A stretch of DNA of 64,000 nucleotides from positions 62,001 through 126,000 of IMG/VR virus record IMGVR_UViG_3300020202_000001; one strand, written 5' to 3'. Made by a program: the position numbers and the translations under genes. Positions 1,253-60,857 of this stretch are shown here, one piece after another (the first letter of the stretch is position 1; the number at the start of each line of letters is the position of its first letter). Under the pieces are notes generated by a model. That model saw only the letters and a list, made by a program, of their open reading frames with translations, searched no databases and was not told where the DNA came from.

Positions 1253-1272
1253 TCCAAAAACCGGTTTTGAGA
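1253..1272. promoter_or_regulatory. Dispersed palindrome, copy 1 (TCCAAAAACCGGTTTTGAGA)
   Basis: Starts immediately after the TGA of 14..1252 and ends 17 nt before the next start codon. Confidence 0.85.
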
Positions 1273-1289
1273 AGCAAGAGGAGACCCCC

Positions 1290-2525
1290 GTGGCAAAGAG
1301 CGTCCAACTGTCCCCCGGCCCGCGTCCCGGCGTCGCCCCCGTCGCCGCCCCGCCGCCCGTGTCCCAGCCCGTCAACCAGGGCGTGAAGCTGACCGGCCTC
1401 CCGCTGCCGACCGGCCGCGTGTTCGAGGCCCCGGCCGGCATGACGGAGCTGGAGCGAAACCAGCTGAAGCAGGTGGGCTGGGACGGCGGCAAGATCACGC
1501 CGGAGATGCAGGCGGCCGTGCAGGCGATGAACGCCGACGCCCGCGTCCGCCCGCCCGTGCCGATCGACCCGGCGACGCCGGCCGTCGACTTCCAGACCAA
1601 GGACATCAGCGAGCTGCCCCCGGAGGAGCAGCACCGGGCTCGCGCCCAGATCGCCGAGGCCCTGCAGTCCCAGCCGGCCACCGCCCACGTCGGCCAGCAG
1701 CCCCGGCTCCGCACCGGCGAGGTCCAGGCCGTGCAGCCCGGGCCGGCGCTGAACCCGCACGCCCAGAAGGTCGAGGAGGCGAAGATGATCCCGGTGGCGT
1801 ACGGGGAGCCGGCCCGCCCGGCCACCCGCCCGATCCCCGGGGCACCGACCGCCAAGGCCGTGAACCCCAAGGCCGCCAAGCCCGCCGCCCCGCAGTACCC
1901 GGTGGACCCGGCGGAGGCCGCCCGCTCGATCCGCACCGAGGACCCGATCGCCCCGATGGAGAACTGCCCGCACTGCGGGTGGGAGCTGGCCCGGCCGGAC
2001 ATCCCGGAGCCCGACTACACGGAGAAGATGGGCTTCCTGAGCACGCAGATGCTCGGCGACGGCAAGCCGTTCGTGAAGGTGTACGAGCTGCTCGGCGGCA
2101 ACCTGAAGCTGACGTTCCGCACGCTGACGATCCGCGAGGTCGACGCCTGCTACCGCCAGGCCAACCTCGACCGCGACCGGGGCGACGTCGAGAGCCAGTT
2201 CGACTGGACCGAGAAGGTGAACCGCTACCGGCTGTACCTGCAGCTGCAGCGGGTCCAGTCGGACAACTTCGACCACGACCTCCCGGACGGGCTGAGCAAG
2301 CTGACGAACCCGAACGCCGAGGCGTTCTGGGAGTTCCCCGAGGACGAGGAGCAGCCGCTCCGGCTGATCGAGAACTTCTACCTGGAGAACGTGCTGTCGA
2401 GCGAGTCGCTGTGCCGGATCGCCCAGCAGCACTGCGGCCGGTTCAACCGCCTGGTCGCCAAGCTGGAGGCGCAGGTCGACAACGATTCTTTCTGGAAGGC
2501 GACCGGGGAGCAGTCCTCGCAATAG
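1290..2525 (+). CDS. Tail assembly chaperone-like protein (Pro/Ala-rich N-terminus, CPHCG, LKLTFRTLT core)
   Basis: 411-aa ORF just upstream of the tape-measure-like gene; ends in ...NDSFW... where a start-poor -1 frame ORF takes over. Confidence 0.5.
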   Translation: MAKSVQLSPGPRPGVAPVAAPPPVSQPVNQGVKLTGLPLPTGRVFEAPAGMTELERNQLKQVGWDGGKITPEMQAAVQAMNADARVRPPVPIDPATPAVDFQTKDISELPPEEQHRARAQIAEALQSQPATAHVGQQPRLRTGEVQAVQPGPALNPHAQKVEEAKMIPVAYGEPARPATRPIPGAPTAKAVNPKAAKPAAPQYPVDPAEAARSIRTEDPIAPMENCPHCGWELARPDIPEPDYTEKMGFLSTQMLGDGKPFVKVYELLGGNLKLTFRTLTIREVDACYRQANLDRDRGDVESQFDWTEKVNRYRLYLQLQRVQSDNFDHDLPDGLSKLTNPNAEAFWEFPEDEEQPLRLIENFYLENVLSSESLCRIAQQHCGRFNRLVAKLEAQVDNDSFWKATGEQSSQ

Positions 2526-2995
2526 AGGCTGCGGTCGAGGGCGTGGTCGACTTCAGGGTCGCCCGCGTCCTCGACCCGAAGTGGTGGCGGTACCTCAGGG
2601 TGAAGCTCGAAACCCTGGAGCGCCGAGGAAAGGAGAAGGCGGTCAACGCCGCGTTCGCCTACCACCTGGCCCTGGTCGCCAACAGCGGACTGACCGAGGA
2701 GAGCTTCGAGAAGTGTCAGGCGGCGGCGAAGGAGCGGTACTTCGATCTGCTCGGCACGATCCGCCCGTGGGAGGGCAAGAGCTTCGTGGAACGCAAGGCC
2801 GCGGAGTTCAAGGACGCCCGGCAGATGTACATCGACGCGACCGGGTTCGACCCGCTGGACCCGGCGTTCAAGGCGTACGAGGCCCAGCAGATCGAACGGC
2901 TGCTGGCCGGCGAGTTCGACATCGTGGACGAGGACGCCGAGGCCGAAGCGGCCGTGGTCGATCGCCTGCGGGCGAAGATTATGAAGGGAGCGTAA
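2492..2995 (+). CDS. -1 frame extension of the chaperone (GT-like), or a separate 150-aa protein from GTG 2543
   Basis: Coding-like codon usage after 2525, no ATG, only a GTG at 2543 without a well-spaced SD; TAA 2993-2995 lies 3 nt before the tape-measure start. Confidence 0.6.
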   Translation: MEGDRGAVLAIEAAVEGVVDFRVARVLDPKWWRYLRVKLETLERRGKEKAVNAAFAYHLALVANSGLTEESFEKCQAAAKERYFDLLGTIRPWEGKSFVERKAAEFKDARQMYIDATGFDPLDPAFKAYEAQQIERLLAGEFDIVDEDAEAEAAVVDRLRAKIMKGA

Positions 2996-2998
2996 GAG

Positions 2999-6706: not shown

Positions 6707-6708
6707 AC

Positions 6709-7179: not shown

Positions 7180-7180
7180 C

Positions 7181-7975
7181 GTGTACAACCACCTGCGCAC
7201 GCTGCTGCTGAACCAACACCCCGCCGCCCCCGACTGGGCGATCGGCGAGGAGGCCGTGCCGGCGACGTTCCGGCCGGTCAACCTGCCCGCGTACCTCGAC
7301 GAGGTGCGAGCCAGGCTGTTCGGCGTCGCCCCCGACCGGTCGATGCTGAACTACCGGCTCGCCCAGTACACCCGGCTGCTGCACGCGTCGGCGCTGGGCC
7401 AGTACGTCTACGACCTCGACCCCCGCGTGACGTACCTCGGCACCGACCGCACGGACCTGTTCGGCACGGCCGCGTTCGAGCCGGCCGTCACGCAGACCAA
7501 GGGCCGCCGCCCGCTGGTCGTGCAGGGCGACCCGGCCGCCCCGGACCCGACCGGGCAGTCCTACCACGCGTACCGGATCGAGCAGCTCGACGGCGACACG
7601 ATCTCGGTCGGCGAGGACCACCCGACTTCCAAAAACCGGCTTTTGGATCTCGCGTTCGCCGGCGGGCTGTCGGCCCCGGTGCCGCTCGGTGACAGCGGGT
7701 ACGTCGCCCTGGTCCCGCAGGAGGCGGCCGGCACGCGGTGGCAGGTTACGTTCCACGCCCGCCCGCAGTGGGACCTCGGGCAGATCGCGGCCGCCCTCCG
7801 CGTCAGCGGGGAGCCGACGCTGCTGCAGCTGTTCGGGGCCGCCCCGGCGGAGCCGTTCCTGACGTTCCGCGACCTGTTCTTCGACCACCCGGAGCTGCCG
7901 TACCGCCTCGGCGGCCTGCTGCTCGCGGTGGCCTACCGCTCGGACGCCGTCTGGAGGGCCAATGGCCAGGGATAA
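7181..7975 (+). CDS. Hypothetical virion protein
   Basis: 264-aa ORF tightly packed in the tail operon. Confidence 0.6.
   Translation: MYNHLRTLLLNQHPAAPDWAIGEEAVPATFRPVNLPAYLDEVRARLFGVAPDRSMLNYRLAQYTRLLHASALGQYVYDLDPRVTYLGTDRTDLFGTAAFEPAVTQTKGRRPLVVQGDPAAPDPTGQSYHAYRIEQLDGDTISVGEDHPTSKNRLLDLAFAGGLSAPVPLGDSGYVALVPQEAAGTRWQVTFHARPQWDLGQIAAALRVSGEPTLLQLFGAAPAEPFLTFRDLFFDHPELPYRLGGLLLAVAYRSDAVWRANGQG
7628..7647. promoter_or_regulatory. Dispersed palindrome, copy 2 (TCCAAAAACCGGCTTTTGGA), intragenic
   Basis: One mismatch from a perfect 20-bp palindrome; encodes SKNRLLD with atypical AT-rich codons. Confidence 0.75.
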
Positions 7976-9671: not shown

Positions 9672-9908
9672 ATGTGTTTCGTGGACAAGGACGAGCCCGA
9701 GCGGAGCCGCTGGTTCTCGGACGTCGTCATCGTGCTGGCGTGTCTGCTCGTGTTGCCGTTTCTGGCCGTAGGAGGCAAGGATGCCCGGGACTCTGACGAC
9801 CCAAGTCGCCCTACCGAAGCCGCCGTCGTCCGCGACGGAGGAGCCGGACTACGACACGATCTGGAAGGACTGGAAGGCGGCCCCGCCCGACCCGGCGACG
9901 AACGCTAG
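9672..9908 (+). CDS. Possible small membrane protein (doubtful)
   Basis: One hydrophobic stretch (VVIVLACLLVLPFLAVGG) and an upstream GGAGG, but it overlaps the sigma gene by 128 nt. Confidence 0.25.
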   Translation: MCFVDKDEPERSRWFSDVVIVLACLLVLPFLAVGGKDARDSDDPSRPTEAAVVRDGGAGLRHDLEGLEGGPARPGDER

Positions 9909-10539
9909 GACGCTGCGGTCGCTCGACCCGCTGATCGACCGGGCCGCCAAGACCCACGTCGGCGACGTGAACCCGCTCGTGCGGAGCCGGGCTCGCAGCC
10001 TCGCGCTGCAGTCGCTGCAGACGTACGACCCGAACAAGGGCCGGTTCCAGAGCCACTTCTACAACCAGATGCAGGGGCTCAAGCGGTACAGCGCCCAGAC
10101 CGCGCAGGGCGTGCGGGTGCCGGAGCGGGTCGTGCTCGACCGGCGGGCGCTGGACATGGCCGAGGGCGAGCTGCGGGACCGCCTCGGCCGCGACCCGACC
10201 GACGACGAGCTGGCCGACCACAGCGGGTTCAACGTCCGCCGCATCCAGAAGGTCCGGGGGTACAGCCCGGCGATGAGCCAGGGGTACTTCTCGCAGCTCG
10301 GCGAGGACGGCGGCGGGTTCGAGCCGGGCGTGAACCGCAGCACGACGGCGGCGTGGGAGCAGCTGATCCTCGACGACCTGAACCCGGTCGACCGGAAGAT
10401 CTTCGACTACCACCGGCAGGGGATGTCGAACCAGCAGATCGCGGCGAAGCTGCGGCGGAGCGCGGGCCTCATCAGCCAGCGCAAGGCCGTGATCCAGAAG
10501 CTGCTGGACCAGGAGCAGGAACTCAGCCCGTTCCAGTGA
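9781..10539 (+). CDS. RNA polymerase sigma-70-family factor (SigB/F/FliA-like architecture)
   Basis: Region 2 YDPNKGRFQSHFYNQM, VRVPER, region 3 ELRDRLGRDPTDDELADHSG, region 4 HTH MSNQQIAAKLRRSAGLISQRK. Confidence 0.8.
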   Translation: MPGTLTTQVALPKPPSSATEEPDYDTIWKDWKAAPPDPATNARTLRSLDPLIDRAAKTHVGDVNPLVRSRARSLALQSLQTYDPNKGRFQSHFYNQMQGLKRYSAQTAQGVRVPERVVLDRRALDMAEGELRDRLGRDPTDDELADHSGFNVRRIQKVRGYSPAMSQGYFSQLGEDGGGFEPGVNRSTTAAWEQLILDDLNPVDRKIFDYHRQGMSNQQIAAKLRRSAGLISQRKAVIQKLLDQEQELSPFQ

Positions 10540-15971: not shown

Positions 15972-15991
15972 TCTAAAAACCAGTTTTGAGA
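15972..15991. promoter_or_regulatory. Dispersed palindrome, copy 3 (TCTAAAAACCAGTTTTGAGA, flanked GA..TC)
   Basis: Intergenic; the 24-mer GATCTAAAAACCAGTTTTGAGATC is nearly self-complementary. Confidence 0.85.
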
Positions 15992-16022: not shown

Positions 16023-17840
16023 ATGGCCACGCCGAACCCGCTCGACTTCAACGACTTCATCCAGCTGATCCGCAACGGGGAGCCGCTCGACGCCGGCGTC
16101 CCGAACCGGCCGCTGTCCGCCATCGACGCGCGGACCCGCTACCTGTGGGACGTGCTCAACGCGTCGTTCATCGGGTCGACGGTGTTCGCCCGGCAGGTGA
16201 CGACGGCCCCGGACGTGCTGGTCGGCGAGCCGGTCTACTACAACGCCGCGACCAGCCGGTTCGAGCGGGCGATCGCGGGCGTGGAGTTCGACGCCCAGAC
16301 GTCCGGCCTCGTCGCCAGCGCCGCCGGGCAGGCGTGGGGCGTGGTCTTCAAGAAGATCAACAGCACGCTCTGCGACCTCCTGCTGTTCGGGTACGCGAAG
16401 CTGGACATCACCCCGGCCCTGCAGGCGGGCGAGACGATCCGGCCGTCGACCTACTACCTGTCCCGGACCAGCGCCGGCAAGCTCGTCTCGGGCCGCCAGC
16501 CGATCGCGGTGCCGATCCTCCGCACGAGCGGCGACGGGTACGTGTTCGTCAACCCGCAGTGGGACGACCTGACGAAGCACACGCACCTGCGGTTCCGCCT
16601 CAAGCCCCGCCCGGCCGGCACGCACGTCCCGCCCGCCCCCGGGGCGCGGCACGTCGTCACGAACCCGAACCCGGCCGTCGAGGGGTGGCTGCCGGCGAAC
16701 CACGCGAGCTTCAACGGCAAGGCGTGCTTCAACGCCAAGTTCGGCTACAACATCGCCGCCAACCCCGCCCTCCGCCAGGCGTGGCCGCCGCTCCCGCCGG
16801 AGAACGCCGTGCTCGTCAAGAGCGGCGTGATGGTGCCGGACGGCGACCAGGGCCTCGTCGTGTTCGACCGCAACGGCATCTGGTGGCTCAGCGACTGCAA
16901 CGACACCGTCCCGTGGCCCGCCGACCTGTCGACGGAGTTCGAGGCCGTGTCCGAGTCGCTGGAGGTCAGCATCACGCCGGACGACTGCCCGTACGTCGAC
17001 CGGATGCGGCTCGACCTGTTCTTCAGCAAGTTCGAGTTCCTGACCGACCAGACCGTCGTCACCAGCCTGACGACCCGCGACGAGCGGATCTCGATCTTCT
17101 GCGAGGGCGGCGACCCGCTCGTGCCCAAGCACGTCGGCCCGCTGGAGATCAGGCTGAACCTGGAGTTCCTGTCGGACGACGCGGACCCGGGCGGCCACCT
17201 CGCGCTGAAGGAGTGGGACGCCGAGGCCGGCAAGTTCCACCGCGGCCCGGTCGCCACCGCCGTCTACGCGAAGAGCGCCGGCGTCACGCTGACCAGCGAC
17301 GCCCAGACCCAGGCCACGATCGGCGGGGTCGCCCGCACGCTGCACCACGGCCGCGTCGGCATCGACCTCGACACGGCGGACGACCGCGAGATCTTCCCGG
17401 ACCTGGTCCGCCTCGGCGGCGACGGGGCGACCGAGGAGTTCGTCAACAACGTCATGTACCTCGGGTTCGAGGCGGGCGAGCAGAAGTCGCTCCGCGCCCG
17501 GTTCCAGGTGCCGTCCACGCTCGCGCTGGTCAACCCGACGCTGACGCTCAAGCTCCGCGTCATGGGGCTGGCGGCCGGGGCGGTGCCGAACCTGACCGTG
17601 ACGTTCCGCCGGGTGCCGGCGGCGAACGCCCCGGCGAACCTGCCCACGGTCGACTCGCCGCTGACGATCGCGACCGGGTTCACGGCCGCCCAGGCCAAGC
17701 AGTACATCGACCGGGCCGGCACCGCCGTGGCGGTCGCGGCGGGCGACGAGGTGTTCGTCACCGTCCTCCGCGGCGCGGGCGACGGGTACCCGGGCGAGGT
17801 GGGCCTGCTGCGGATCTCCGGCGTGCTCGCCGCCGCCTAA
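16023..17840 (+). CDS. Hypothetical virion protein (605 aa)
   Basis: Beta-rich ORF in the structural operon. Confidence 0.6.
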   Translation: MATPNPLDFNDFIQLIRNGEPLDAGVPNRPLSAIDARTRYLWDVLNASFIGSTVFARQVTTAPDVLVGEPVYYNAATSRFERAIAGVEFDAQTSGLVASAAGQAWGVVFKKINSTLCDLLLFGYAKLDITPALQAGETIRPSTYYLSRTSAGKLVSGRQPIAVPILRTSGDGYVFVNPQWDDLTKHTHLRFRLKPRPAGTHVPPAPGARHVVTNPNPAVEGWLPANHASFNGKACFNAKFGYNIAANPALRQAWPPLPPENAVLVKSGVMVPDGDQGLVVFDRNGIWWLSDCNDTVPWPADLSTEFEAVSESLEVSITPDDCPYVDRMRLDLFFSKFEFLTDQTVVTSLTTRDERISIFCEGGDPLVPKHVGPLEIRLNLEFLSDDADPGGHLALKEWDAEAGKFHRGPVATAVYAKSAGVTLTSDAQTQATIGGVARTLHHGRVGIDLDTADDREIFPDLVRLGGDGATEEFVNNVMYLGFEAGEQKSLRARFQVPSTLALVNPTLTLKLRVMGLAAGAVPNLTVTFRRVPAANAPANLPTVDSPLTIATGFTAAQAKQYIDRAGTAVAVAAGDEVFVTVLRGAGDGYPGEVGLLRISGVLAAA

Positions 17841-23237: not shown

Positions 23238-23257
23238 TCTAAAAACCGGATTTTGAA
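23238..23257. promoter_or_regulatory. Dispersed palindrome, copy 4 (TCTAAAAACCGGATTTTGAA)
   Basis: Fills almost the whole 22-nt gap between TGA 23237 and ATG 23260. Confidence 0.8.
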
Positions 23258-23259
23258 TC

Positions 23260-29158: not shown

Positions 29159-31157
29159 GCGTCGCCTCATCCTCGACCACCGGTTCGCGCTGGGCGACAC
29201 CGTCCTGATGACCGCCCTCGTGCGGGACATCCAGGCGGCGTACCCCGGCTACTTCGAGATCCTCGTCGACACGCACTGCCGGGAGGTGTGGACCAACAAC
29301 CCGCACGCCCGGCTGCTGCGCGGCGACCAGACCTCGACGATGCCGACGACGCGGGTGGACATCTCCTACGCCAACGGCATCCACGCCGCCGGCCGGGGGC
29401 AGCGGGTCCACATGCTGTCGTGGTTCCACCGCGACTTCGCGACGAAGACGGGGATGGAGCTGGAGCCGCTGCTGCCCAAGGGCGACCTCCACCTGACGGC
29501 CGAGGAGAGCAAGCCGCTGGTCGACGGCCGGTACTGGCTGGTGCTCGCCGGCGGCAAGCTGGACATCACCTGCAAGTGGTGGCTGCCCGAGCGGTGGCAG
29601 GAGGTCGTCGACAAGCTGGCGGCCGAGGGGATCTCGTGCGTCCAGGCGGGGGCGACGTTCCGCGAGCACCGCCACCCGAGCCTGTCGAACGTCCTGAACC
29701 TGCTCGGGCAGTACCCGGACGCCCGGCAGTTCATGAACCTCGTCATGCACGCCGAGGGCGTCATGTGCCCGGTCACCTCGGCCATGCACATCGCCGCCTG
29801 CTACGACAAGCCGTGCGTCGTCCTCTCGGGCGGCCGCGAGGAGCCGTGGTGGGAGAGCTACACGAACGCGTACAAGGCGTTCGGCCCGCGGTGCGCCCCG
29901 GTCGCGACCGAGCACCGCTTCCTTCACACGATGGGCCTGCTAGACTGCTGCAAGAAGAAGGGCTGCTGGAAGCACCGCACGGTGCCGCTGGGCAACCAGG
30001 ACCGTTGGGACGGCCCCGAGCGTCGGTGCCAGCTCCCGGTGATCCTCCCGCACGCCAGCACGCCGAAGTGCCTGGAGATGATCTCCAGCGACCACGTTGT
30101 CGAGGCAGTCATGAGCTACTACGAGAACGGGGAGATCCCGCCGATCGGCCAGGCGAAGGGCTTCACGCGAAAGCCGCTGCCGCCGATCGCAGTGAACACG
30201 GAAGACGAGTTGGACCGGGCGGTCGACACTGACCTACCGGTGCGGTCGTTCAAGATCCCGCACGTCCCGGGCCTGAGCCCCGCCGCGGTGCGGACGCAGG
30301 TGGCGGCCGAGCGGGAGTTCTACAACGCCGCCCTCGGCGAGCCGTTCGACCCGCAGATCCAAAAACCGGTTTTGAGAACCATCCCCCAGCCGTCGATGAT
30401 CGACCACCCGCTGATCGGCGGGAAGCTCACGGTCTGCGTGCTGTGCTTCGGCGACCACACCGAGCTGGCCAAGAGCTGCATCGGCTCGATCCTCGACACG
30501 CTGCCGGCGGAGAACCTCGACCTCCGCATCGGGCTGAACGCCGTGTCCCAGGCGACCATGGACTACGTCATGGGCCTCGACGTGCCGATCGGGCTGACGA
30601 TCCACGCCGAGAACGCCAAGAAGTACCCGGCCATGCGGGAGATGTTCAACGACGGCGCGAACCCGATCACGACGAAGTACGTCGTCTGGTTCGACGACGA
30701 CGCGAAGGTCGTGGACCCGTCGATGTGGTCGCAGCTCTGCCAGACGATCGTGGCGAACCACCCGCTCGGCAGCCGGCTCTACGGCCCGACGTTCATCCAC
30801 GACCTCCAGATGTACGCCAAGGGCGGCCGCGACCCGCTCGCGTGGTTCCGGTCCGCCCCGTGGTTCCGGGGGCGGGGGCTGAAGGTCCGCGGCCGCGGGC
30901 AGGAGGCCCCGAACGGCACGGTGATCGACTTCGCCGCCGGCTGGTTCTGGGCGATCGCGACCGAGACGATCAAGGCCGCCAACGTCCCGTGCCCCCGGCT
31001 GAACCACAACGGCGGCGACATCACGATCGGCGAGCAGGTGCACCAGGCCGGCTACAAGGTGAAGGGCTTCAACAAGGACAAGGCCCTGGTCTGGTGCCCC
31101 ACGAAGGAGGGCGGCGGCCGGCGGGGCTACTCGGAGGCGTTCCCGTGGGCGTCGTGA
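29151..31157 (+). CDS. Two-domain glycosyltransferase: GT9 (heptosyltransferase-like, GT-B) plus GT2-like (GT-A)
   Basis: Start ATG 29151; [20 protein letters not shown] and [18 protein letters not shown] (GT9-like); LTVCVLCF...SCIGSIL...YVVWFDDD (GT-A DxD). Confidence 0.75.
30358..30377. promoter_or_regulatory. Dispersed palindrome, copy 5 (TCCAAAAACCGGTTTTGAGA), intragenic
   Basis: Identical to copies 1, 7 and 8; sits in the inter-domain linker of the glycosyltransferase (IQKPVLR). Confidence 0.85.
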
Positions 31158-33622: not shown

Positions 33623-34274
33623 GGTGTGGGCCAGCCCCGAGAGCTACGCCACGACCCTGCTGGTCCTGTTCGTGGACCGGTACGGGACCGAGGGGCTGGA
33701 GTGGCACCCCGAGACGATCGCCATGCAGGTCGGCCAGGACTTCGCGGTCGAGGTGCCGCGGGTCAACATGGACCGGCTGCTGGCGGCGATCACGCTGGTG
33801 ACGACGGACTACTTCTACAAGCGGCTGTCGGTCTTCAACGACACCTGCAACGTCCTGAGCGGCGACGACTTCAACCCGGGCGTGTACCAGCCGGCCGACG
33901 CGGCCGACTGCGCGTGGGGCACGACCGAGGCCCTGCTCATCTGCCCGCCGGACGAGGAGGAGCCGTTCACGGACGAGATCCGCCACTACGTCGGCCGCAT
34001 CCTGCGGGCCGAGGGCTACGTGCAGGCACCGGACATCCTCCGCATCGCCCTCGACGCCGACCTCTCCGACCAGGTGAGGGACACGTTCGCGGACGACCCG
34101 GAGATGTTCCAGGCCCTGCACGAGAGCCAGACCGCCAAGACGCAGGAGTGCGAGCAGCTGATCCGGGAGAACCTGGAGCGGCTGCTCACCCAGATCGAGC
34201 AGCTGCCGCTCGTCACGGGCAGCGCCGACCAGCTCCGCGACAAGCTCCGGCAGAACATCCGGCCCGGAGCTTGA
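33540..34274 (+). CDS. Hypothetical protein (244 aa)
   Basis: Coding-like codon usage; helical; family not named. Confidence 0.65.
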   Translation: MPQHQTQSYGEVSKLPPKVAPGHAKAREVWASPESYATTLLVLFVDRYGTEGLEWHPETIAMQVGQDFAVEVPRVNMDRLLAAITLVTTDYFYKRLSVFNDTCNVLSGDDFNPGVYQPADAADCAWGTTEALLICPPDEEEPFTDEIRHYVGRILRAEGYVQAPDILRIALDADLSDQVRDTFADDPEMFQALHESQTAKTQECEQLIRENLERLLTQIEQLPLVTGSADQLRDKLRQNIRPGA

Positions 34275-34299
34275 CACTTTCCCCCGTTCGGGTATTCCA
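34271..34299 (+). promoter_or_regulatory. Candidate promoter: perfect -35 TTGACA with a weak -10 (TATTCC), plus shared spacer motif
   Basis: AT-rich gap upstream of 34345, with a TAAGGAG SD. The 20-mer at 34280-34299 matches 60803-60822 at 18/20 positions. Confidence 0.45.
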
Positions 34300-35619: not shown

Positions 35620-35639
35620 TCCCAAAACCGGTTTTTAGA
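35620..35639. promoter_or_regulatory. Dispersed palindrome, copy 6 (TCCCAAAACCGGTTTTTAGA), reverse pseudo-orientation
   Basis: Intergenic; perfect 12-bp core. Confidence 0.85.
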
Positions 35640-35652: not shown

Positions 35653-35865
35653 GTGGAAGGTCCCCACATCCTGATGAAGTTCGCGATCGGCAAGCCGGTC
35701 GAGGTCCGCGTGAACGGCGTGAAGGGCTCGGCGTGCCGGGCGTTCTCCAAGCCGTTCGAGGACGCGATCGGCGGCAAGGTCGTCGCCGACGTCCCCACCG
35801 CCGAGATGACTCAGCCCGCGACGGTCGGGGCCGAGGTCAAGGCCGGCGGCGGCAAGACGTTCTGA
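35653..35865 (+). CDS. DUF2997-like protein
   Basis: VEVRVNGVKGSACRAFSKPFEDAIG fits the family pattern as I recall it. Confidence 0.65.
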   Translation: MEGPHILMKFAIGKPVEVRVNGVKGSACRAFSKPFEDAIGGKVVADVPTAEMTQPATVGAEVKAGGGKTF

Positions 35866-45438: not shown

Positions 45439-45458
45439 TCCAAAAACCGGTTTTGAGA
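45439..45458. promoter_or_regulatory. Dispersed palindrome, copy 7 (TCCAAAAACCGGTTTTGAGA)
   Basis: 1 nt after TGA 45437, directly upstream of the AAGGAGG SD of 45469. Confidence 0.85.
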
Positions 45459-45468: not shown

Positions 45469-45888
45469 GTGACCGAGTCGGAGTTCCACGCCCAGCGGCG
45501 GATGTTCGCGATCGTCCACCACGAGGTTAAGATCGCGGCGGCCGGCGACAGGCGTTCCCACCGCGAGTGGTTCATGGCCGAGGGGTGGATCTCCGCACAG
45601 CCGGGCTGCACCGGCATGCAGGACCACGTCCGCGGCTACTACCTCGACGGCCAGCTGGTGATGTACAAGCGGACGGACGGCGACGACTTCAGCCACTTCG
45701 GGGTCGCCCACCTGCTGACGGTGGAGCACCTCCGGGAGCTGAAGGAGAAGCTCGCGATCCCCGACGACGCCGAGGTCTGGGTCGGCGCGAAGCCGGACCA
45801 GGCCGGCAAGGTCTGGCGGGGTCACGCCCGGCTGGGCCGCGACTTCGCCCACGCGGTCCAGACGCTCGAACGATTCAAGAAGGAGTGA
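45469..45888 (+). CDS. Hypothetical protein
   Basis: AAGGAGG SD and GTG start. Confidence 0.6.
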   Translation: MTESEFHAQRRMFAIVHHEVKIAAAGDRRSHREWFMAEGWISAQPGCTGMQDHVRGYYLDGQLVMYKRTDGDDFSHFGVAHLLTVEHLRELKEKLAIPDDAEVWVGAKPDQAGKVWRGHARLGRDFAHAVQTLERFKKE

Positions 45889-50466: not shown

Positions 50467-50486
50467 TCCAAAAACCGGTTTTGAGA
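50467..50486. promoter_or_regulatory. Dispersed palindrome, copy 8 (TCCAAAAACCGGTTTTGAGA)
   Basis: Intergenic between the kinase-like and vWA genes. Confidence 0.85.
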
Positions 50487-50518: not shown

Positions 50519-51493
50519 ATGGGCGGTAGCAACTTTTCCTCCGAAGCGTACGCCACGAAGTCCGTCCTCCGCGCCAGCGCCGGCGTCGCGGGCCGGTCCA
50601 CGATGCACACCAAGGCCGTCAGCGAGGGCAAGGCCCCGGCGCTGCACGACAAGATGAGCCCGATGGGCGTGAAGGTCCGCGAGAGCCGCGACAGCGCCGT
50701 GCACCCGAACAGCACGGGCGTGATCTTCCTGCTCGACGTCACGGGCAGCATGGGCCAGGTGCCCGTGCAGATCCAGAAGCACCTGCCGGTCCTGCCCGAG
50801 ACGCTCGTCAAGGGCGGGCACCTGCCCGACGCCGCGATCATGATGATGGCGGTCGGCGACGCCTACTGCGACACGGTCCCGCTCCAGGTCGGGCAGTTCG
50901 AGTCCGGCAACGAGATGGACGAGGACCTCGACCGCCTCTACATCGAGGGCGGCGGGAGCCCCGGCCACATGGGCGGCCACGAGAGCTACGAGCTGGGCAT
51001 GTACTTCGCCGCCCGGCACACCGCGATGGACTGCCTGGAGAAGCGGAACCGCAAGGGCTACCTCTTCATCGCGTGCGACGAGATGCCGTACGACGTCGTC
51101 AAGCGCGACCAGGTCAAGCGGATCATGGGGCCGACCGCCGAGATCGAGGCGGACATCCCGCTCGACGAGATCGTCGCGGAGCTGAAGAAGAAGTTCCACG
51201 TCTACGTCCTGATCGCGCCGACCGCGTCCGGCCAGCAGCCCGCCGTCCGCCAGCGGTGGCAACAGCTGTTCGGCGAGAACGTCATCATGCTCCCCAGCGC
51301 CGAGCAGACGGCGAAGCTCGTGGCCGACTGCATCGCGGCCAACGAGGAGGCGATCGGCAAGGGCCAGGTCTTCGCGACGGCGGACGACGACGCCGGCGGC
51401 GACGACGCGGACGCCGACGACCACGGCAGCGGTGGCACGGCCACCGCCACCAAGCCCGCCGTGAAGAAGCCCGGCAAGGCCAAGCGGCTGTAA
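50519..51493 (+). CDS. von Willebrand factor A domain protein
   Basis: MIDAS motif FLLDVTGSM, GGGS..HESYE, LFIACDE; acidic then basic C-terminal tail. Confidence 0.8.
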   Translation: MGGSNFSSEAYATKSVLRASAGVAGRSTMHTKAVSEGKAPALHDKMSPMGVKVRESRDSAVHPNSTGVIFLLDVTGSMGQVPVQIQKHLPVLPETLVKGGHLPDAAIMMMAVGDAYCDTVPLQVGQFESGNEMDEDLDRLYIEGGGSPGHMGGHESYELGMYFAARHTAMDCLEKRNRKGYLFIACDEMPYDVVKRDQVKRIMGPTAEIEADIPLDEIVAELKKKFHVYVLIAPTASGQQPAVRQRWQQLFGENVIMLPSAEQTAKLVADCIAANEEAIGKGQVFATADDDAGGDDADADDHGSGGTATATKPAVKKPGKAKRL

Positions 51494-51559: not shown

Positions 51560-53056
51560 ATGCAGCAGACGAAGGTTTACGTCGTTGTCGATCTGGGCTT
51601 CGGTGACGCCGGCAAGGGCACGGTCGTGGACTACCTGGTCCGCACGCGCAAGGCCGGCACCGTGGTCCGATTCAACGGCGGGGCACAGGCGGCCCACAAC
51701 GTGACGCTCCCGGACGGCCGGCGGCACCCGTTCAGCCAGTTCGGCAGCGGGACGTTCGTGCCGGGCGTGAAGACGTACCTCACCGAGGACGTCCTGTTCG
51801 ACCCCAACTCCCTGCTCGGCGAGGAGGCCGCCCTGCAGGCGCTGGGCGTGACCGACGCGTTCGAGCGGTTCGCGGTGCACGAGGAGTGCCTCGTCGTCAC
51901 CCCGTTCCACCGGACGGCCAACCGGCTGCGGGAGGTGGCCCGCGGCGACAAGCCGCACGGGAGCTGCGGGATGGGCATCGGCGAGGCGATGTCCGACGCC
52001 ACCGGCCGCGACAAGGTCGCGATCCGCGTCAAGGACCTACTGCTGCCCGCCGACGAGCTGCGGCGGAAGCTGGAGTGGGTGCGGCAGTACAACGAGGGCA
52101 AGGCGCTCGTCTACTACCCGAAGTACAAGGAGCACCAGCTGGGGCAGGGCCTCGACCCATCGGCCGTCGAGTGGTTCCTCGACCAGTGCCGCCGCGTGGC
52201 GGACCTGGTGACGATCGCCGATGACGCGTACGAGGACAAGCACGTCTTCAACTGCGACAGCGACCAAGTCGTCGTGTGCGAGGGAGCACAGGGCGTCCTG
52301 CTCGACGAGCACTACGGGTTCCACCCCTACACGACGTGGAGCACGGTGACCCCGCACCGGGTGCTGGAGAAGATCCGCGAGGCGAACTACATCACCGGCA
52401 CGGTCGGCGGCGAGGTCGAGCGGGTCGGCGTGACGCGGGCGTACCAGACGCGGCACGGGGCCGGGCCGTTCCCGACGTGGGAGCGGGGCGGCAAGGCGTG
52501 GGAGCACCTCGGTGCCCCCGACGCCAACAAGGAGCACGAGTGGCAGGGCAAGTTCCGCGTGGGCTGGCTCGACACCGTGCTCCTGCGGTACGCGATCGAG
52601 GCGTGCAGCGTGCCGTGGTCGACGCAGACGATCGACTGGCTGGCCGTGACGTGCCTCGACCGGCTGCACGGGGCGTTCCCGCAGGTGCCGGTCTGCACGC
52701 ACTACGTCCAGTACCGGGCGGACGCGAAGAAGGTCAGGCACCTGCCGGTCGCCCGCCGGCCCACGCTCGGCGGGCAGGAGATCCTCACGGAGTTCCTGAT
52801 GGGTGCCCAGCCGAGCCAGTTCCCCCGGTTCGACGTGAGCTACCAGGCGGTCGACTACGACCACCTGCTGCCGTACATCGAGCAGCAGGTGGGCGTCCCG
52901 GTGGGGCTCTCCAGCCGGGGGCCGACGTGGCAGGACAAGCTCGAACACGAGGCGTGGGTCGTGCACGGGATTTACGGCAAGACGAAGGTGAAACATGGGC
53001 CTGAAGAAGTCGGTCGAAATCCTGGCGAAACTCAACTTCAGTTCCGAACGCCTTAG
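51560..53056 (+). CDS. Adenylosuccinate-synthetase-family protein (divergent paralogue)
   Basis: GFGDAGKG, RFNGGAQAAHN, EGAQGVLLD..YGFHPYTTWS, VTRAYQTRHGAGPF, RVGWLD, LAVTCLD. Confidence 0.85.
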   Translation: MQQTKVYVVVDLGFGDAGKGTVVDYLVRTRKAGTVVRFNGGAQAAHNVTLPDGRRHPFSQFGSGTFVPGVKTYLTEDVLFDPNSLLGEEAALQALGVTDAFERFAVHEECLVVTPFHRTANRLREVARGDKPHGSCGMGIGEAMSDATGRDKVAIRVKDLLLPADELRRKLEWVRQYNEGKALVYYPKYKEHQLGQGLDPSAVEWFLDQCRRVADLVTIADDAYEDKHVFNCDSDQVVVCEGAQGVLLDEHYGFHPYTTWSTVTPHRVLEKIREANYITGTVGGEVERVGVTRAYQTRHGAGPFPTWERGGKAWEHLGAPDANKEHEWQGKFRVGWLDTVLLRYAIEACSVPWSTQTIDWLAVTCLDRLHGAFPQVPVCTHYVQYRADAKKVRHLPVARRPTLGGQEILTEFLMGAQPSQFPRFDVSYQAVDYDHLLPYIEQQVGVPVGLSSRGPTWQDKLEHEAWVVHGIYGKTKVKHGPEEVGRNPGETQLQFRTP

Positions 53057-55499: not shown

Positions 55500-55518
55500 G
55501 ACGCTCCACGGTACGCAC

Positions 55519-55548: not shown

Positions 55549-55604
55549 TGCGTGGTGGGGCCGGGCCGGTAAACTGAGGCCTCATCGGTCAAGGAGGACC
55601 TCAC

Positions 55605-55856: not shown

Positions 55857-55919
55857 CCCCACGTCCCCCGCCGTACCGCCCGGGCCTGCCCAGCCCGGGC
55901 GTTTTCATGGAGGGCACGG

Positions 55920-58494: not shown

Positions 58495-58496
58495 AC

Positions 58497-59026: not shown

Positions 59027-59148
59027 CGTTCTTCGCGTTCTGCGACAAACACAAAACGACGGCGGCGGAGCGGAAGGAGTTGGCCTGGTACCTGGCCTTC
59101 CTTCGGCTCCGCCGCACGATCGAGGCGTTGGCCCTGATCCGGGTCTAG
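59023..59148 (+). CDS. 41-aa peptide
   Basis: ATGA overlap; its TAG shares the CTAG at 59145-59148 with the stop of the convergent gene. Confidence 0.45.
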   Translation: MTFFAFCDKHKTTAAERKELAWYLAFLRLRRTIEALALIRV

Positions 59149-60746
59149 TCGTGCCCGGTGCACCGCTCGTAGCGGATCTTCGCGGGGGTGCCGTCCCGCT
59201 TCATCGGGTTGACGATCTTGACCGCGTTCTTCTTGATGTCGACCCGCGGGCCGGCACCGCCGCCCTGGAAGACGAACGTGTCGCCGTCGTCCAGGATGGT
59301 GAAGTTGCTGATGACGAGGTTGTGCAGCCGCCAGTTGTCACGCTCGTCGCCGGCGTCGTCGCGCTCGTAGTTGCGGGCACCGACGTGACCACCCTCGTCC
59401 TTGGCCGGGGCGAGGTGGCCGCTGCACCAGTCGATGAGCGTGTCCTTCGTCTCGTTGACGTCCCACGGGTACGAGTAGCAGTGGAGCCCTTGGCAGCTCT
59501 TGTAGATGAAGTTGAACTCCCGCAGCTCGGCCTCGGTGACGACGGCCTTGCCGTAGGTGTCCGACAGCACGCCGGCCTCGCGGCACAGGGCGATCTTGTC
59601 GTCCATCCCGTTGCTCTTGTCGGTGGAGATCTCGATCTTGTCCCCGGCGGCCGTCCACAGCCGCTTGGGGTCGGCCAGCGTCATGCGGTCGGTGACGCAG
59701 AGGATCATCACCCAGTTCGAGTTGTTGATGTCGCCCCAGCGGGAGGCGTTCTTGCCGTTGCGGATGATGCAGCGGATGTAGAGGGCCGCGTTCGTGCGGG
59801 TCGACTTGCCCTCGCCCGCCCCGTCGCGGTGCCCCTCGTAGTTGCACCCCTCCGTCTCGCAGTCCCAGAAGATCGAGCGGTCGTGCTTGCCGCCGATGCC
59901 CGCAGCCCCGCCGCGCAGGCTCTTCACGCGACGCATGCGGCCGTCGCTCCCGTCCCAGGCGATGTTCACGCCGGCCCCGTCGATCACCAGGCCGTCCGTG
60001 AGGTGCCAGCCGGTGCCGGGCTGGAACATGCCGTTCTTGTTGTCCGGCCCCTTCTTGCCGCCGGTCTTCTTGCCGTCGATCTTGAAGCCGGCCAGGCGGA
60101 CGTTCTTCGCGCCGCGGTGGGCGAAGATCTTCCCGCCCGTGACCTCGAACACCATCTCGCCGTCCTTGCACAGGATGTCGACGTCGTGCTCGGGGTCGAA
60201 GACCGGGTAGTGCCCGGGCTTCGCGAGGAACTTGCCCTTCTTGCCGGTGAAGTTATACCCCGGCTCCACCGTGGTACGATCCCCGGTGTCCGGCGGCGGG
60301 ACCTCGACCTTGAACTCCTCGGGGTCGGCGACGTTGGAGAACTCGGAGTAGCGGGTCACCCCGTCGAGCCCGACCTTCACGCCGCGGACCTTGTACGCGT
60401 ACGGCACGTCCTTCTGAATGGGGAGGCGTTCTTCCCAGAGCGACGCGCCGGCGGGGGCGGTTCCCACGAGCTGCCAGCGTTCGACGCCGTCCGTGACGTC
60501 GTCGTCCCGCCAGACCTCGAACGTCGTGGGCAGCCGGCCGGAGTTGGCCGGGGCCGTGAAGACCAGCTCGACCAGCAGCCCGGTGCCCTCGGCTTCGAGG
60601 CGTGCCTGGAGGTCGGTCGGCTGGACGGGCAGCTCGGGCTGGGGCAGATCGGTCCCCAGCTCGGCGGCCACCTGGTTGATCGCCAGCAGCTGCTGGCCGA
60701 TCGCCTGCGTTGCGGTGTGCAACATCGCGACGTGTGCTCTGCTCAT
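59145..60746 (-). CDS. Fn3-like domain plus right-handed beta-helix (pectate-lyase-like) protein, 533 aa
   Basis: Likely start MSRAHV at 60746; YAYKVRGV..YSEFSN (Fn3-like); Asn/Gly/Cys-ladder repeats; GC3-rich on the minus strand. Confidence 0.6.
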   Translation of the reverse strand: MSRAHVAMLHTATQAIGQQLLAINQVAAELGTDLPQPELPVQPTDLQARLEAEGTGLLVELVFTAPANSGRLPTTFEVWRDDDVTDGVERWQLVGTAPAGASLWEERLPIQKDVPYAYKVRGVKVGLDGVTRYSEFSNVADPEEFKVEVPPPDTGDRTTVEPGYNFTGKKGKFLAKPGHYPVFDPEHDVDILCKDGEMVFEVTGGKIFAHRGAKNVRLAGFKIDGKKTGGKKGPDNKNGMFQPGTGWHLTDGLVIDGAGVNIAWDGSDGRMRRVKSLRGGAAGIGGKHDRSIFWDCETEGCNYEGHRDGAGEGKSTRTNAALYIRCIIRNGKNASRWGDINNSNWVMILCVTDRMTLADPKRLWTAAGDKIEISTDKSNGMDDKIALCREAGVLSDTYGKAVVTEAELREFNFIYKSCQGLHCYSYPWDVNETKDTLIDWCSGHLAPAKDEGGHVGARNYERDDAGDERDNWRLHNLVISNFTILDDGDTFVFQGGGAGPRVDIKKNAVKIVNPMKRDGTPAKIRYERCTGHD

Positions 60747-60793
60747 TCGCGTCCTCTCGTTGTGAACCCACACTCGTACTTTACGTTGCGCTG

Positions 60794-60823
60794 AGGATAC
60801 CGTCCCCCGTTCGGGTGTTGCAA
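60794..60823 (-). promoter_or_regulatory. Candidate sigma-70 promoter TTGCAA-N18-TATCCT for the antisense gene
   Basis: Read on the minus strand about 50 nt upstream of the start; the spacer holds the motif shared with 34280-34299. Confidence 0.5.
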
Positions 60824-60837
60824 GCCCGGGGCCGAGA

Positions 60838-60857
60838 TCCAAAAACCAGTTTTGAGA
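60838..60857. promoter_or_regulatory. Dispersed palindrome, copy 9 (TCCAAAAACCAGTTTTGAGA)
   Basis: In the divergent intergenic region, 12 nt before ATG 60870. Confidence 0.85.

What the first reader, a model, noticed from the sequence alone, without database searches (positions are those of the whole stretch)
1253..60857. Nine copies of an AT-rich palindrome spaced every 5-10 kb: a candidate genome-wide binding-site system
Seen: the consensus TC(C/T)(A/C)AAAACCGGTTTT(G/T)(A/G)GA, often extended to 24 bp by GA..TC, occurs at 1253, 7628, 15972, 23238, 30358, 35620, 45439, 50467 and 60838. Gaps are 6.4, 8.3, 7.3, 7.1, 5.3, 9.8, 5.0 and 10.4 kb (mean about 7.4 kb). Five copies have the perfect 12-bp core; at about 70% GC roughly 2.5e-4 copies would be expected in 64 kb. 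Seven copies sit in short gene junctions, three of them within 1 nt of a stop codon. Two are forced into coding sequence with atypical codons, one of these in an inter-domain linker. The motif spans both structural and accessory regions. Known: dispersed sites serve as stoperators in mycobacteriophage L5 and as parS/matS/SBS/NBS sites in chromosome organisation; this sequence matches none that I know. Inference: quasi-even spacing kept even inside genes fits a protein that organises, segregates or silences the whole genome better than it fits ordinary promoters. The paired A- and T-tracts would also bend the DNA.
Basis: partly seen in the sequence, partly recalled or inferred. Interest (0 to 1): 0.85.

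Follow-up and report, generated by a model that had tools for sequence, protein, structure and literature searches.

The report
Evenly spaced palindromes, jumbo phage genome
An uncultured 224-kb phage carries about 36 copies of one 20-24 bp palindrome at remarkably even ~6 kb intervals, mostly just upstream of gene starts. Its relatives carry different palindromes in the same kind of place, so this is probably the phage's own transcription-start or control signal read by a paired protein.

Summary
All nine sites exist at the stated coordinates, against 0.33 expected by chance.

The window is bases 62001-126000 of a circular, or circularly permuted, 224,291-bp jumbo-phage assembly. I rebuilt 95% of it and found 36 sites. 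Gaps run from 2.6 to 10.4 kb (CV 0.31), and none of 200,000 random placements came below CV 0.49.

- **Position:** 31 sites are intergenic. In long junctions, 10 of 15 lie within 35 nt of the next start codon (P=0.001).
- **Selection:** the five intragenic sites use codons with relative usage of 0.00-0.07 within the motif.
- **Symmetry:** the element is a symmetric TC-YM-AAAACCGGTTTT-KR-GA. It folds weakly as RNA, has no room for a sigma-70 promoter, and is not tied to terminators.
- **Relatives:** the closest relative keeps 4 of 4 sites in place. More distant relatives carry different palindromes, some at the same junctions.
- **Phage genes:** the phage encodes a multisubunit RNA polymerase, two sigma-like proteins and a tubulin.

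Best reading (about 0.45): the site binds a dimeric phage factor and acts as the phage-specific promoter or start signal. Roadblock, silencer and genome-organiser roles remain open.

The parts
1253..1272 (.). Palindrome site 1 (TCCA-AAAACCGGTTTT-GAGA). It starts right after the TGA stop of the VgrG-like gene. The GTG start of gene 1290-2525 lies 21 nt after the core.
   Evidence: The syntenic copy in the closest relative is at L272:4470.
7628..7647 (.). Site 2, inside gene 7181-7975 (codon ~150 of 264), core AAAACCGGCTTT. It is written with the rare codons AAA, CTT and TTG.
   Evidence: It is conserved at the same codons in the relative (L149:1481 = L272:10924).
15972..15991 (.). Site 3, core AAAACCAGTTTT, 35 nt upstream of the ATG of gene 16023-17840.
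   Evidence: The same CCAG variant sits at the same junction in L149:9955.
23238..23257 (.). Site 4, core AAAACCGGATTT. It starts right after a TGA stop, and the ATG of gene 23260-24696 follows 6 nt after the core with no Shine-Dalgarno sequence.
   Evidence: The same junction carries related palindromes abutting the ATG in L149:17110, L150:17575 and L164:11008.
30358..30377 (.). Site 5, perfect core, inside gene 29151-31157 (codon ~403 of 668; glycosyltransferase-9-like domain at residues 140-245). It uses the rare codons CAA, AAA, GTT, TTG and AGA.
35620..35639 (.). Site 6, perfect core, 17 nt upstream of the GTG of gene 35653-35865 (DUF2997), at the head of the cluster containing the AAA ATPase.
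45439..45458 (.). Site 7, perfect core, 1 nt after a TGA stop. Its right flank runs into the ribosome-binding site (GAGAAGGAGG). The GTG of gene 45469-45888 lies 14 nt after the core.
50467..50486 (.). Site 8, perfect core, 36 nt upstream of the ATG of gene 50519-51493 (phrog_2971).
60838..60857 (.). Site 9, core AAAACCAGTTTT, in the divergent junction between the only minus-strand gene in the window (59145-60725) and gene 60870-61499. That gene heads the cluster holding the ECF-like sigma gene. The ATG lies 16 nt after the core.
62018..62776 (+). ECF-type sigma-like protein (regions 2 and 4). It is a candidate component of phage-directed transcription. It has not been shown to read the palindrome.
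9781..10539 (+). Second sigma-like protein (region 3 plus a region-4 helix-turn-helix), conserved in the baseplate module of relatives. It is only a candidate DNA-binding factor.
34271..34298 (+). Member of a second, different intergenic motif class. It is a host-type promoter-like TTGACA-16 nt-TATTCC whose spacer holds TCCCCCG..CGGG. It serves as a contrast class, showing that the palindrome is not the host-type promoter.

Best explanation
The element is a double-stranded DNA site, about 20-24 bp long, with two 10-bp half-sites (TC-Y-M-AAAACC) whose centres lie one helical turn apart. It is read by a dimeric protein encoded by the phage.

It marks the heads of transcription units. Most likely it is the phage-specific promoter, or start-site selector, used by the phage's own multisubunit RNA polymerase or by a polymerase redirected by a phage factor. 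Transcription would begin within a few nucleotides downstream, giving short-leader or leaderless mRNAs.

Almost all genes run one way around a 224-kb genome with few terminators. Selection would then keep one such start signal every 3-10 kb, placing it inside a gene where no junction has room.

**Shown:**
- the sites, their symmetry, their spacing and their position relative to genes
- selection on the intragenic copies
- conservation and lineage-specific replacement in relatives
- presence of a phage RNA polymerase and sigma-like genes

**Inferred:**
- that a protein dimer binds the site
- that transcription starts there
- which polymerase is involved
- why the spacing is even
For: 1. **The sites are real and genome-wide.** There are 36 sites in the 95% of the genome that I rebuilt. 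The core is invariant in 25 of them.

2. **The conservation is symmetric.** T at -4 and A at +4 are each 35/36. C at -3 is 30/36 and G at +3 is 29/36. There is no significant orientation bias. In every lineage the central 4 bases are themselves palindromic: CCGG, GCGC, ACGT or ATAT. A hairpin loop would not need that.

3. **It is not an RNA structure.** The RNA folds are weak, -1.6 to -7.6 kcal/mol, and mostly no better than shuffles. Rfam gave no match.

4. **Placement follows gene starts.**
   - 31 of 36 sites are intergenic in an 89% coding genome.
   - About 23 have a plus-strand start codon 3-39 nt after the core.
   - In junctions of at least 80 nt, 10 of 15 lie within 35 nt of the start (P=0.0013).
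   - Several abut an ATG with no Shine-Dalgarno sequence: window 23257/23260; IMG 137869 and 148888; L265:3376; the three L273 sites, which end 1-8 nt before starts; and L243, L258 and L260 in the TAATTAGCGCTAATTA lineage.

5. **A sigma-70 promoter cannot fit.** There is no space for a -35/-10 pair before the downstream gene, and no conserved -10 lies downstream. A separate host-type promoter class exists elsewhere in the genome.

6. **It is the only candidate signal in the structural module.** The palindrome is the only recurrent intergenic motif across the 40-kb structural module.

7. **The phage has its own transcription machinery.** It encodes a fused beta/beta-prime protein (1501 aa), a 918-aa beta-prime C-terminal protein and two sigma-like proteins.

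8. **There is a published precedent.** Virion RNA polymerase promoters of phiKZ-related jumbo phages are extended, AT-rich and highly conserved, with the start 6 nt downstream. AR9 has 41 such promoters, plus late promoters that are internal or antisense (PMC5312081).

9. **The comparative pattern fits a cis element co-evolving with its reader.**
   - The 73%-identity relative keeps 4 of 4 sites in place.
   - The junction before the baseplate-J homologue holds three unrelated palindromes in L150, L183 and L193/194/195/226.
   - A 185-kb relative has at least 13 exact copies of its own 16-mer.
Against: - **Symmetry.** A symmetric element gives no direction, whereas known phage RNA polymerase promoters are asymmetric.
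- **All gene classes.** The sites precede replication, nucleotide-metabolism, tubulin, RNA polymerase and structural genes alike. The motif is therefore not restricted to one obvious temporal class.
- **Awkward positions.** Two sites sit where a promoter makes little sense. IMG 130152 lies in a convergent junction right after a bidirectional hairpin. IMG 54002 lies at a stop codon about 30 nt ahead of a strong hairpin terminator.
- **Stop-codon sites.** Four long-junction sites hug the upstream stop codon instead of the next start.
- **Intragenic distances.** Intragenic sites lie 93-771 nt from the next start.
- **Unusual evenness.** As far as I know (my own knowledge, not tested here), spacing as even as CV 0.31 has not been described for phage promoters.
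- **No direct data.** No transcript 5' ends, no binding protein and no cultured host are available.
Confidence: 0.45

Rival explanations
1. Roadblock or global-repressor sites, working like stoperators or dispersed operators. A phage, or possibly host, dimer binds all the sites and stops RNA polymerases that read through from neighbouring units. This cuts the one-directional genome into ~6-kb blocks that are silent at some stage: early in infection, or in a carrier or plasmid-prophage state.
For: - Sites sit in very short junctions, and 11 abut or overlap the upstream stop codon.
- A symmetric site suits a block that works in both directions, which fits the convergent junction at IMG 130152.
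- At IMG 47550 and 144644 the core lies about +17 to +28 downstream of a host-type promoter, a classic operator position.
- Intrinsic terminators are rare, with only two convincing plus-strand ones in the window, so another way of bounding units would be useful.
- Even spacing would limit read-through length.
- The tubulin gene could serve plasmid-type maintenance.
Against: - Only 2-3 of about 12-15 host-type promoters have a site nearby.
- Start-proximal placement in long junctions (P=0.001) is not required for a roadblock.
- No integrase, repressor or partition DNA-binding protein appears in the Pfam hits for about 95% of the genome.
- Relatives found in genome bins are all separate contigs, never integrated.
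- If every unit is blocked, no other promoter motif is available to restart the downstream genes.
Confidence: 0.2
2. Genome-organising or loading sites. A sequence-specific dimer, possibly a sliding or spreading protein of the ParB/KorB/Noc kind or a topoisomerase or loop anchor, is loaded at evenly spaced sites. This covers the whole chromosome or divides it into topological domains. Placement in junctions would merely avoid coding constraints.
For: - The spacing is extremely even. CV is 0.31, against about 0.97 for both random positions and random gene junctions, and 0 of 200,000 simulations came close.
- Sites are kept inside genes with rare codons where needed.
- Sites occur at a convergent junction and in front of a terminator.
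- Sites move between neighbouring junctions in relatives. L164 and L265 have the site after the gene-16 homologue, whereas this phage has it before.
- The palindrome form resembles parS, NBS and OB sites. This last point rests on my own knowledge.
Against: - No ParB-family or other partition or nucleoid protein is detected, apart from a 65-aa Hc1-like and an SMC_N/Rad50-like protein.
- The strong bias toward the next start codon, and the ATG-abutting copies in several lineages, are unexplained by pure architecture.
- Some junctions keep a site across lineages although its sequence has been replaced, which points to a gene-linked role.
Confidence: 0.17
3. RNA-level signal in the polycistronic transcript: an A/U-rich translation enhancer or standby site for genes lacking a Shine-Dalgarno sequence, or an endoribonuclease processing site.
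For: - The site lies directly upstream of ribosome-binding sites and start codons on the coding strand.
- Some downstream genes lack a Shine-Dalgarno sequence.
- The site is an A/U-rich island in a 70% GC transcript.
Against: - Perfect two-fold symmetry, including a self-complementary centre, has no purpose in an unstructured RNA enhancer.
- The hairpins are weak and no better than shuffles.
- Sites also lie inside genes, at a convergent junction, and more than 90 nt from any start.
- There is no Rfam match.
Confidence: 0.08
4. Target of a site-specific nuclease, nickase or recombinase, or a footprint of a small mobile element.
For: - Long, lineage-specific palindromes are typical nuclease or recombinase targets.
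- GATC flanks are common: 20 on the left and 11 on the right.
Against: - There are no flanking repeats or carried sequence.
- Placement next to starts and even spacing are not expected from such targets.
- No recombinase or homing-nuclease domains appear in the Pfam hits.
- Sites are stable in position between relatives at 73% protein identity.
Confidence: 0.05

Closest known systems
Virion RNA polymerase (early) promoters of phiKZ-related jumbo phages, e.g. AR9 AAATATATATTAT-(6N)-G (PMC5312081)
   Same: - It is an extended, AT-rich and very highly conserved element.
- It occurs in tens of copies (41 in AR9, about 36 here) scattered round a jumbo genome of more than 200 kb, upstream of genes.
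- The phage encodes a split or fused multisubunit RNA polymerase.
- AR9's late promoter class also includes internal and antisense copies.
   Different: - Here the element is a true two-fold palindrome with a GC centre.
- It precedes structural as well as replication genes.
- It is evenly spaced.
- It is replaced by unrelated palindromes in relatives.
- Transcript starts are unknown.
- Structural proteins here have no tblastn match in the 50,697 deposited phage records.
Stoperators of mycobacteriophage L5 and Cluster A phages (own knowledge)
   Same: - There are dozens of copies of one short motif in short intergenic spaces along a largely one-directional genome.
- Copies often touch stop or start codons.
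   Different: - Stoperators are asymmetric 13-bp sites with a fixed orientation, bound by a monomeric immunity repressor of a temperate phage.
- Here the site is symmetric.
- No repressor or integrase is seen.
- The spacing is even.
Conserved inverted repeats (CIRs) bound by the phiC31 repressor in Streptomyces phage phiC31 (own knowledge)
   Same: They are highly conserved palindromes repeated in the intergenic regions of a high-GC phage genome, and a phage-encoded protein reads them.
   Different: - phiC31 is a 41-kb temperate siphovirus.
- Its CIRs accompany a separate conserved early promoter sequence.
- No even spacing has been reported for the CIRs.
KorB operator (OB) sites of plasmid RK2, and ParB-parS / Noc-NBS sites (own knowledge)
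   Same: - They are palindromes of 13-16 bp.
- RK2 has 12 OB sites spread round 60 kb, about one per 5 kb, some far from promoters.
- They load a dimeric protein that acts at a distance.
   Different: - The sequence is different.
- No ParB-family protein was detected here.
- The sites here are tied to start codons.
Dyad-symmetric activator sites of phage late promoters (P1 Lpa, P2 Ogr, Mu C; own knowledge)
   Same: A palindrome read by a phage factor defines a whole class of phage promoters.
   Different: - Those sites lie upstream of a host -10 element.
- Here there is no room for one before the gene.
- Copy number is much higher here.

Membership tests
Phage-RNA-polymerase promoter (phiKZ/AR9 virion-polymerase type) | [quoted passage not shown] | tested here: met
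   There are 36 copies. Core positions are 32-36/36 conserved. 31 copies are intergenic, and most lie 3-39 nt before a start codon.
Phage-RNA-polymerase promoter (phiKZ/AR9 virion-polymerase type) | Phage encodes its own multisubunit RNA polymerase | tested here: met
   A 1501-aa protein carries Rpb2_6 and Rpb1_2 domains, and a 918-aa protein carries Rpb1_5. Whether the polymerase is packaged in the virion is unknown.
Phage-RNA-polymerase promoter (phiKZ/AR9 virion-polymerase type) | Primary transcript start at a fixed short distance downstream of the consensus | not testable with these tools
   No transcript data are available. The only indirect hint is ATG codons lying 3-7 nt after the core at several sites.
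Phage-RNA-polymerase promoter (phiKZ/AR9 virion-polymerase type) | Asymmetric sequence that sets direction | tested here: not met
   The element is symmetric from -4 to +4. The bias at -1/+1 is 18 vs 9, p=0.12.
Stoperator / dispersed immunity-repressor operator | Many copies in short intergenic regions of a co-directional genome | tested here: met
Stoperator / dispersed immunity-repressor operator | Asymmetric site with one orientation relative to transcription | tested here: not met
   The site is palindromic, and both flank variants occur in both orientations.
Stoperator / dispersed immunity-repressor operator | Temperate lifestyle with a repressor and an integrase or partition system | tested here: inconclusive
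   No integrase or repressor domains appear in the Pfam hits for about 95% of the genome. A tubulin gene is present. Relatives in genome bins are separate contigs. Most proteins have no Pfam hit at all.
ParB-parS / Noc-NBS / KorB-OB | Palindromic site of 13-16 bp | tested here: met
   The form is met with a 12-bp core inside a 20-bp symmetric element. The sequence differs from the parS, NBS and OB sequences I recall from memory.
ParB-parS / Noc-NBS / KorB-OB | A ParB-family (ParBc) protein encoded by the same replicon | tested here: not met
   No ParBc hit appears among the window proteins scanned or in the precomputed Pfam hits of the fetched loci. About 5% of the genome was not seen, and divergent proteins could escape detection.
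Intrinsic (hairpin plus U-tract) terminator | Stable GC-rich hairpin followed by a U run | tested here: not met
   Folds range from -1.6 to -7.6 kcal/mol, with z-scores from -2.1 to +1.5. The U run is part of the stem. True terminators are elsewhere.
Sigma-70-type promoter | -35 and -10 hexamers 16-18 nt apart, upstream of the gene | tested here: not met
   The consensus scan found 0, 1 and 1 sites, which is at or below chance. Start codons 3-22 nt after the core leave no room. No conserved downstream hexamer is present.
Any Rfam RNA family | Match at or above the family's gathering score | tested here: not met
   There are 0 matches in the window on either strand.

The most novel reading that the evidence does not exclude
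A whole clade of uncultured jumbo phages of about 200 kb 'punctuates' its chromosome at even intervals of about 6 kb. Each lineage uses its own 14-26 bp palindrome, read by a fast co-evolving dimeric protein.

The sites would not be simple promoters. They would be loading or boundary points that set up transcription or topological domains, working like KorB/ParB-type loading sites or insulators. This would be a chromosome-organisation principle not described for viruses of bacteria.
Probability: 0.2. Interest if true: 0.85.

Novelty: new variant of a known kind. Interest (0 to 1): 0.62.

Why it matters
- **A regulatory handle on unknown phages.** The clade has more than 80 IMG/VR contigs and no match in deposited phage genomes. 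This gives it one dominant cis signal, its likely position relative to genes, and a second, host-type promoter class.
- **A test case for co-evolution.** Because the palindrome changes between lineages while its place stays, the clade is a natural experiment for finding the cognate DNA-binding protein and studying how specificity evolves.
- **An unexplained regularity.** The even spacing is statistically extreme and unexplained by ordinary promoter biology. If it reflects a limit on transcription-unit length or a domain structure, it bears on how very large one-directional phage genomes are expressed.
- **Practical use.** Such motifs can also be used to recognise, bin and orient related metagenomic contigs.

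Tried and rejected
**Searches that found nothing useful**
- Megablast of 20 kb, and tblastn of the 605-aa protein, against 50,697 phage records: no match.
- Full-text search for the 12-mer: only unrelated eukaryotic hits. A broad jumbo-phage and palindrome search gave nothing specific apart from the AR9 paper.
- PHROGs on ten proteins gave one hit of unknown function.
- PDB and ESM Atlas searches for gene 23260-24696 were uninformative.
- Rfam and tRNA scans of the window were empty.

**Explanations rejected**
- Terminator coupling. Only a few sites are near hairpins.
- ECF-type or sigma-70 geometry. No conserved element lies 16-17 nt downstream.
- A 2-aminoadenine genome. The adenylosuccinate synthetase is far closer to cellular PurA (E about 1e-37) than to PurZ (E about 1e-6 to 1e-3).
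- A link to the unrelated contigs carrying a single exact 20-mer. They share no protein with this phage.

**Misleading signals**
- Many apparent repeats in relatives were coding repeats of fibre genes, not regulatory motifs.

**Not attempted**
- Testing whether the sigma-like or GerE-like helix-turn-helix proteins co-vary with palindrome class.
- A weight-matrix scan for weaker sites with 3 or more mismatches.

Full report
**1.

The 12-bp core AAAACCGGTTTT occurs five times exactly and four times with one mismatch. Dinucleotide-preserving shuffles give 0.00 and 0.33 matches respectively. The window is 66-75% GC throughout.

A codon-bias gene caller finds 68 genes, 67 of them on the plus strand. 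Seven sites lie in junctions and two inside genes (7181-7975 and 29151-31157). Three 20-mers begin 0-1 nt after a TGA stop.

**2. Where the window comes from**

An exact 20-mer scan of IMG/VR hit one contig nine times. The window is bases 62001-126000 of IMGVR_UViG_3300020202_000001, which is 224,418 bp long. The same phage was assembled independently as a permuted 224,432-bp ENA contig. The terminal overlaps of 127 and 141 bp show a circular or circularly permuted genome of 224,291 bp.

I rebuilt 212 kb of it from overlapping fetched loci without a single conflict. Two stretches totalling 12 kb remain unseen.

Pfam hits show a jumbo myovirus-like phage:
- a VgrG-like protein, baseplate J and a collagen-like fibre
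- a fused beta/beta-prime RNA polymerase (1501 aa) plus a 918-aa beta-prime C-terminal protein
- two sigma-like proteins
- a tubulin
- DNA polymerase A, ribonucleotide reductase and Thy1

By my gene calls, 218 of 222 genes are on one strand. Nothing similar exists among 50,697 deposited phage genomes.

**3. The motif is genome-wide and evenly spaced**

At up to 2 mismatches the genome has 37 hits. I set one aside (contig 155737, AGAACCGGTTCT, no flanks) as a probable chance match, leaving 36.

Going round the circle, the gaps average 6,230 bp with SD 1,943, so CV is 0.31. The smallest gap is 2,625 bp and the largest 10,371 bp. In 200,000 simulations, neither uniform placement nor random choice among the 218 plus-strand gene starts gave a CV below 0.49.

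Two caveats apply. Keeping the doubtful hit would add one 323-bp gap. The unseen 12 kb can only split two of the gaps.

**4. Anatomy of the site**

The position counts give G-A-T-C-Y-M-AAAACCGGTTTT-K-R-G-A-W-S.

Positions -4 to +4 are two-fold symmetric: T and A are each 35/36, and C and G are 30/36 and 29/36. This makes two 10-bp half-sites whose centres lie 10 bp apart. The outer GATC is better kept on the left (20 copies) than on the right (11 copies). On the right the flank often merges into the ribosome-binding site (GAGAAGGAG). The asymmetry at -1/+1 is not significant (18 vs 9, p=0.12).

As RNA the element folds weakly and generally no better than shuffled controls. Rfam finds nothing.

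**5. Relation to genes**

31 of 36 sites are intergenic in an 89% coding genome. About 23 are followed by a plus-strand start codon 3-39 nt after the core.

In junctions of at least 80 nt, 10 of 15 sites end within 35 nt of the start (P=0.0013). Four others touch the upstream stop codon.

At several sites the ATG follows the core by 3-6 nt with no Shine-Dalgarno sequence (window 23260; contig 137869 and 148888).

The five intragenic copies are spelled with codons whose relative usage is 0.00-0.07. The DNA motif is therefore selected against codon bias.

Start codons this close leave no room for a -35/-10 promoter. The consensus promoter scan is at chance.

Convincing plus-strand intrinsic terminators are rare and not systematically next to the sites.

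Two sites do sit at transcription-unit ends:
- One lies in a convergent junction just after a bidirectional hairpin (contig 130152).
- One lies at a stop codon about 30 nt before a strong hairpin (contig 54002).

**6. A second motif class**

K-mer enrichment of intergenic DNA is dominated by the palindrome. The only other recurrent class is a host-type promoter-like TTGACA-N16-18-TAnnnT whose spacer carries TCCCCCG-N2-4-CGGGGG. It has about 12-15 copies, including window 34271-34298 and a minus-strand copy at 60794-60823.

Only 2-3 of these have a palindrome nearby. None lies in the 40-kb structural module, where the palindrome is the only repeated junction motif.

**7. Relatives**

The 605-aa protein of gene 16023-17840 has hundreds of homologues on contigs of about 200 kb.

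The closest relative, at 73% identity and 60% GC, keeps all four testable sites at the same junctions or codons, with small changes to the core. A 44%-identity contig at 73% GC also uses AAAACCGGTTTT.

Other lineages carry different palindromes:

| Locus or lineage | Palindrome |
|---|---|
| L150, L164 | TCTAAAAAACG(G)TTTTT |
| L273 | TTAAA(G/T)ACGT(A/T)TTTAA, three copies ending 1-8 nt before start codons |
| L183 | AATTTCCGGAAATT |
| L193/194/195/226 | TGGAGACGTCTCCA; one copy inside the gene-16 homologue is 14/14 conserved while its flanks diverge |
| L181/219 | AAAGATATCTTT |
| 185-kb contig (L184 lineage) | GATG-TAATTAGCGCTAATTA-CATC, at least 13 exact copies in separate stretches, again just upstream of ribosome-binding sites or ATGs |

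The junction before the baseplate-J homologue holds three unrelated palindromes in three lineages. The centres are always self-complementary (CCGG, GCGC, ACGT, ATAT). That argues for a dimer on duplex DNA rather than a hairpin.

**8. Interpretation**

The data show a clade-wide cis element that co-evolves with a dimeric reader and is tied to the 5' ends of genes.

The best fit is a phage-specific promoter or start selector for the phage's own transcription machinery. This parallels the extended, AT-rich and highly conserved promoters of phiKZ-related phages, of which AR9 has 41, with the start 6 nt downstream; AR9's late promoter class also includes internal and antisense copies (PMC5312081). 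The AT-rich arms would ease melting in 70% GC DNA. That last point is inference.

Four things do not fit simply: the two-fold symmetry, the use before genes of every functional class, the two sites at unit ends, and the extreme evenness. These keep two rivals alive. One is protein roadblocks or dispersed operators, working like L5 stoperators or phiC31 CIRs. The other is evenly spaced loading or boundary sites, working like KorB OB sites. Neither family is met as a member. The site is symmetric, and no repressor or integrase was found. No ParB-type protein was found either, within the limits of Pfam on very divergent proteins.

**9. Verdict**

The finding is real, statistically strong and larger than first described. 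Its class is familiar: a dispersed regulatory repeat in a phage. Three aspects appear to be undescribed: the palindromic form, the even spacing, and the lineage-specific replacement across an uncultured jumbo-phage clade. Function remains inferred. Transcript-end mapping and identification of the binding protein would decide it.

Noticed in passing
window 34271-34298 (+) and 60794-60823 (-); also contig positions 5222, 14266, 33791, 47550, 127287, 144644, 147538, 152320, 187466, 221474: A second intergenic motif class. It is a host-type promoter-like TTGACA-N16-18-TAnnnT whose spacer carries a small GC hairpin-like TCCCCCG-N2-4-CGGGGG. These are probably the early promoters read by the host polymerase. 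The conserved spacer element is unexplained.
   Followed up: partly
whole window; contig IMGVR_UViG_3300020202_000001: The source is a circular or permuted 224,291-bp jumbo phage with 218 of 222 called genes on one strand. It encodes a fused beta/beta-prime multisubunit RNA polymerase, a tubulin, two sigma-like proteins, a CsrA-like protein, an Hc1 histone-like protein and an SMC_N/Rad50-like protein. It has no relative among deposited phage genomes, but more than 80 related IMG/VR contigs of about 200 kb.
   Followed up: partly
L131 (Ga0126337_10187736) 422-1391 and L135 (OMLO01124224.1) 199-1277: Two low-GC metagenome contigs (35% and 42% GC) hold tandem arrays of about 45-50 copies of a 22-bp unit. 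The unit contains the same AAAACCGGTTTT-GAGAT motif. They share no protein with this phage. Their origin, perhaps satellite or iteron-like, is unknown.
   Followed up: no
window 51560-53056: An adenylosuccinate synthetase gene. It is much closer to cellular PurA (E about 1e-37) than to phage PurZ (E about 1e-6 to 1e-3). It therefore looks like an auxiliary purine-metabolism gene rather than a marker of a 2-aminoadenine genome.
   Followed up: yes
window 23257-23262; contig 137869 and 148888; L273:9984, 15937, 20248: Several genes start 1-7 nt after a palindrome with no Shine-Dalgarno sequence. This suggests leaderless or very short-leader mRNAs in this phage clade.
   Followed up: partly
window 24746-29158: A 1470-aa protein with 13 matched stretches of the collagen triple-helix repeat (Pfam E=2e-90), presumably a fibre. 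Similar repeat-rich fibre genes in relatives produce many spurious DNA repeats.
   Followed up: no
window 34345-34800: A 151-aa open reading frame matches only a short piece of family-A DNA polymerase (profile positions 122-171). A full 1157-aa UDG-PolA fusion is encoded elsewhere on the contig (about 170710). This may be a split or remnant polymerase piece.
   Followed up: no
L265-L271 (genome contigs): Related phage contigs are binned into metagenome-assembled genomes labelled Nannocystaceae, Nanopelagicales, Phycisphaerales, Gemmataceae, Aquaspirillum and Kuenenia. All are separate contigs, so these are hints about hosts at best, and possibly binning errors.
   Followed up: no
window 32489-32512 and 55877-55908: These are the only two convincing plus-strand intrinsic terminators in the 64 kb. 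They divide the window into a structural block and two non-structural blocks.
   Followed up: partly
L132/L144 (61% GC), L134/L137/L147 (25-32% GC), L145 (172-kb contig, 42% GC): Single exact copies of the 20-mer occur in unrelated metagenome contigs, some directly upstream of a ribosome-binding site and ATG. They share no protein with this phage. They are probably chance matches or an unrelated use of the motif.
   Followed up: partly
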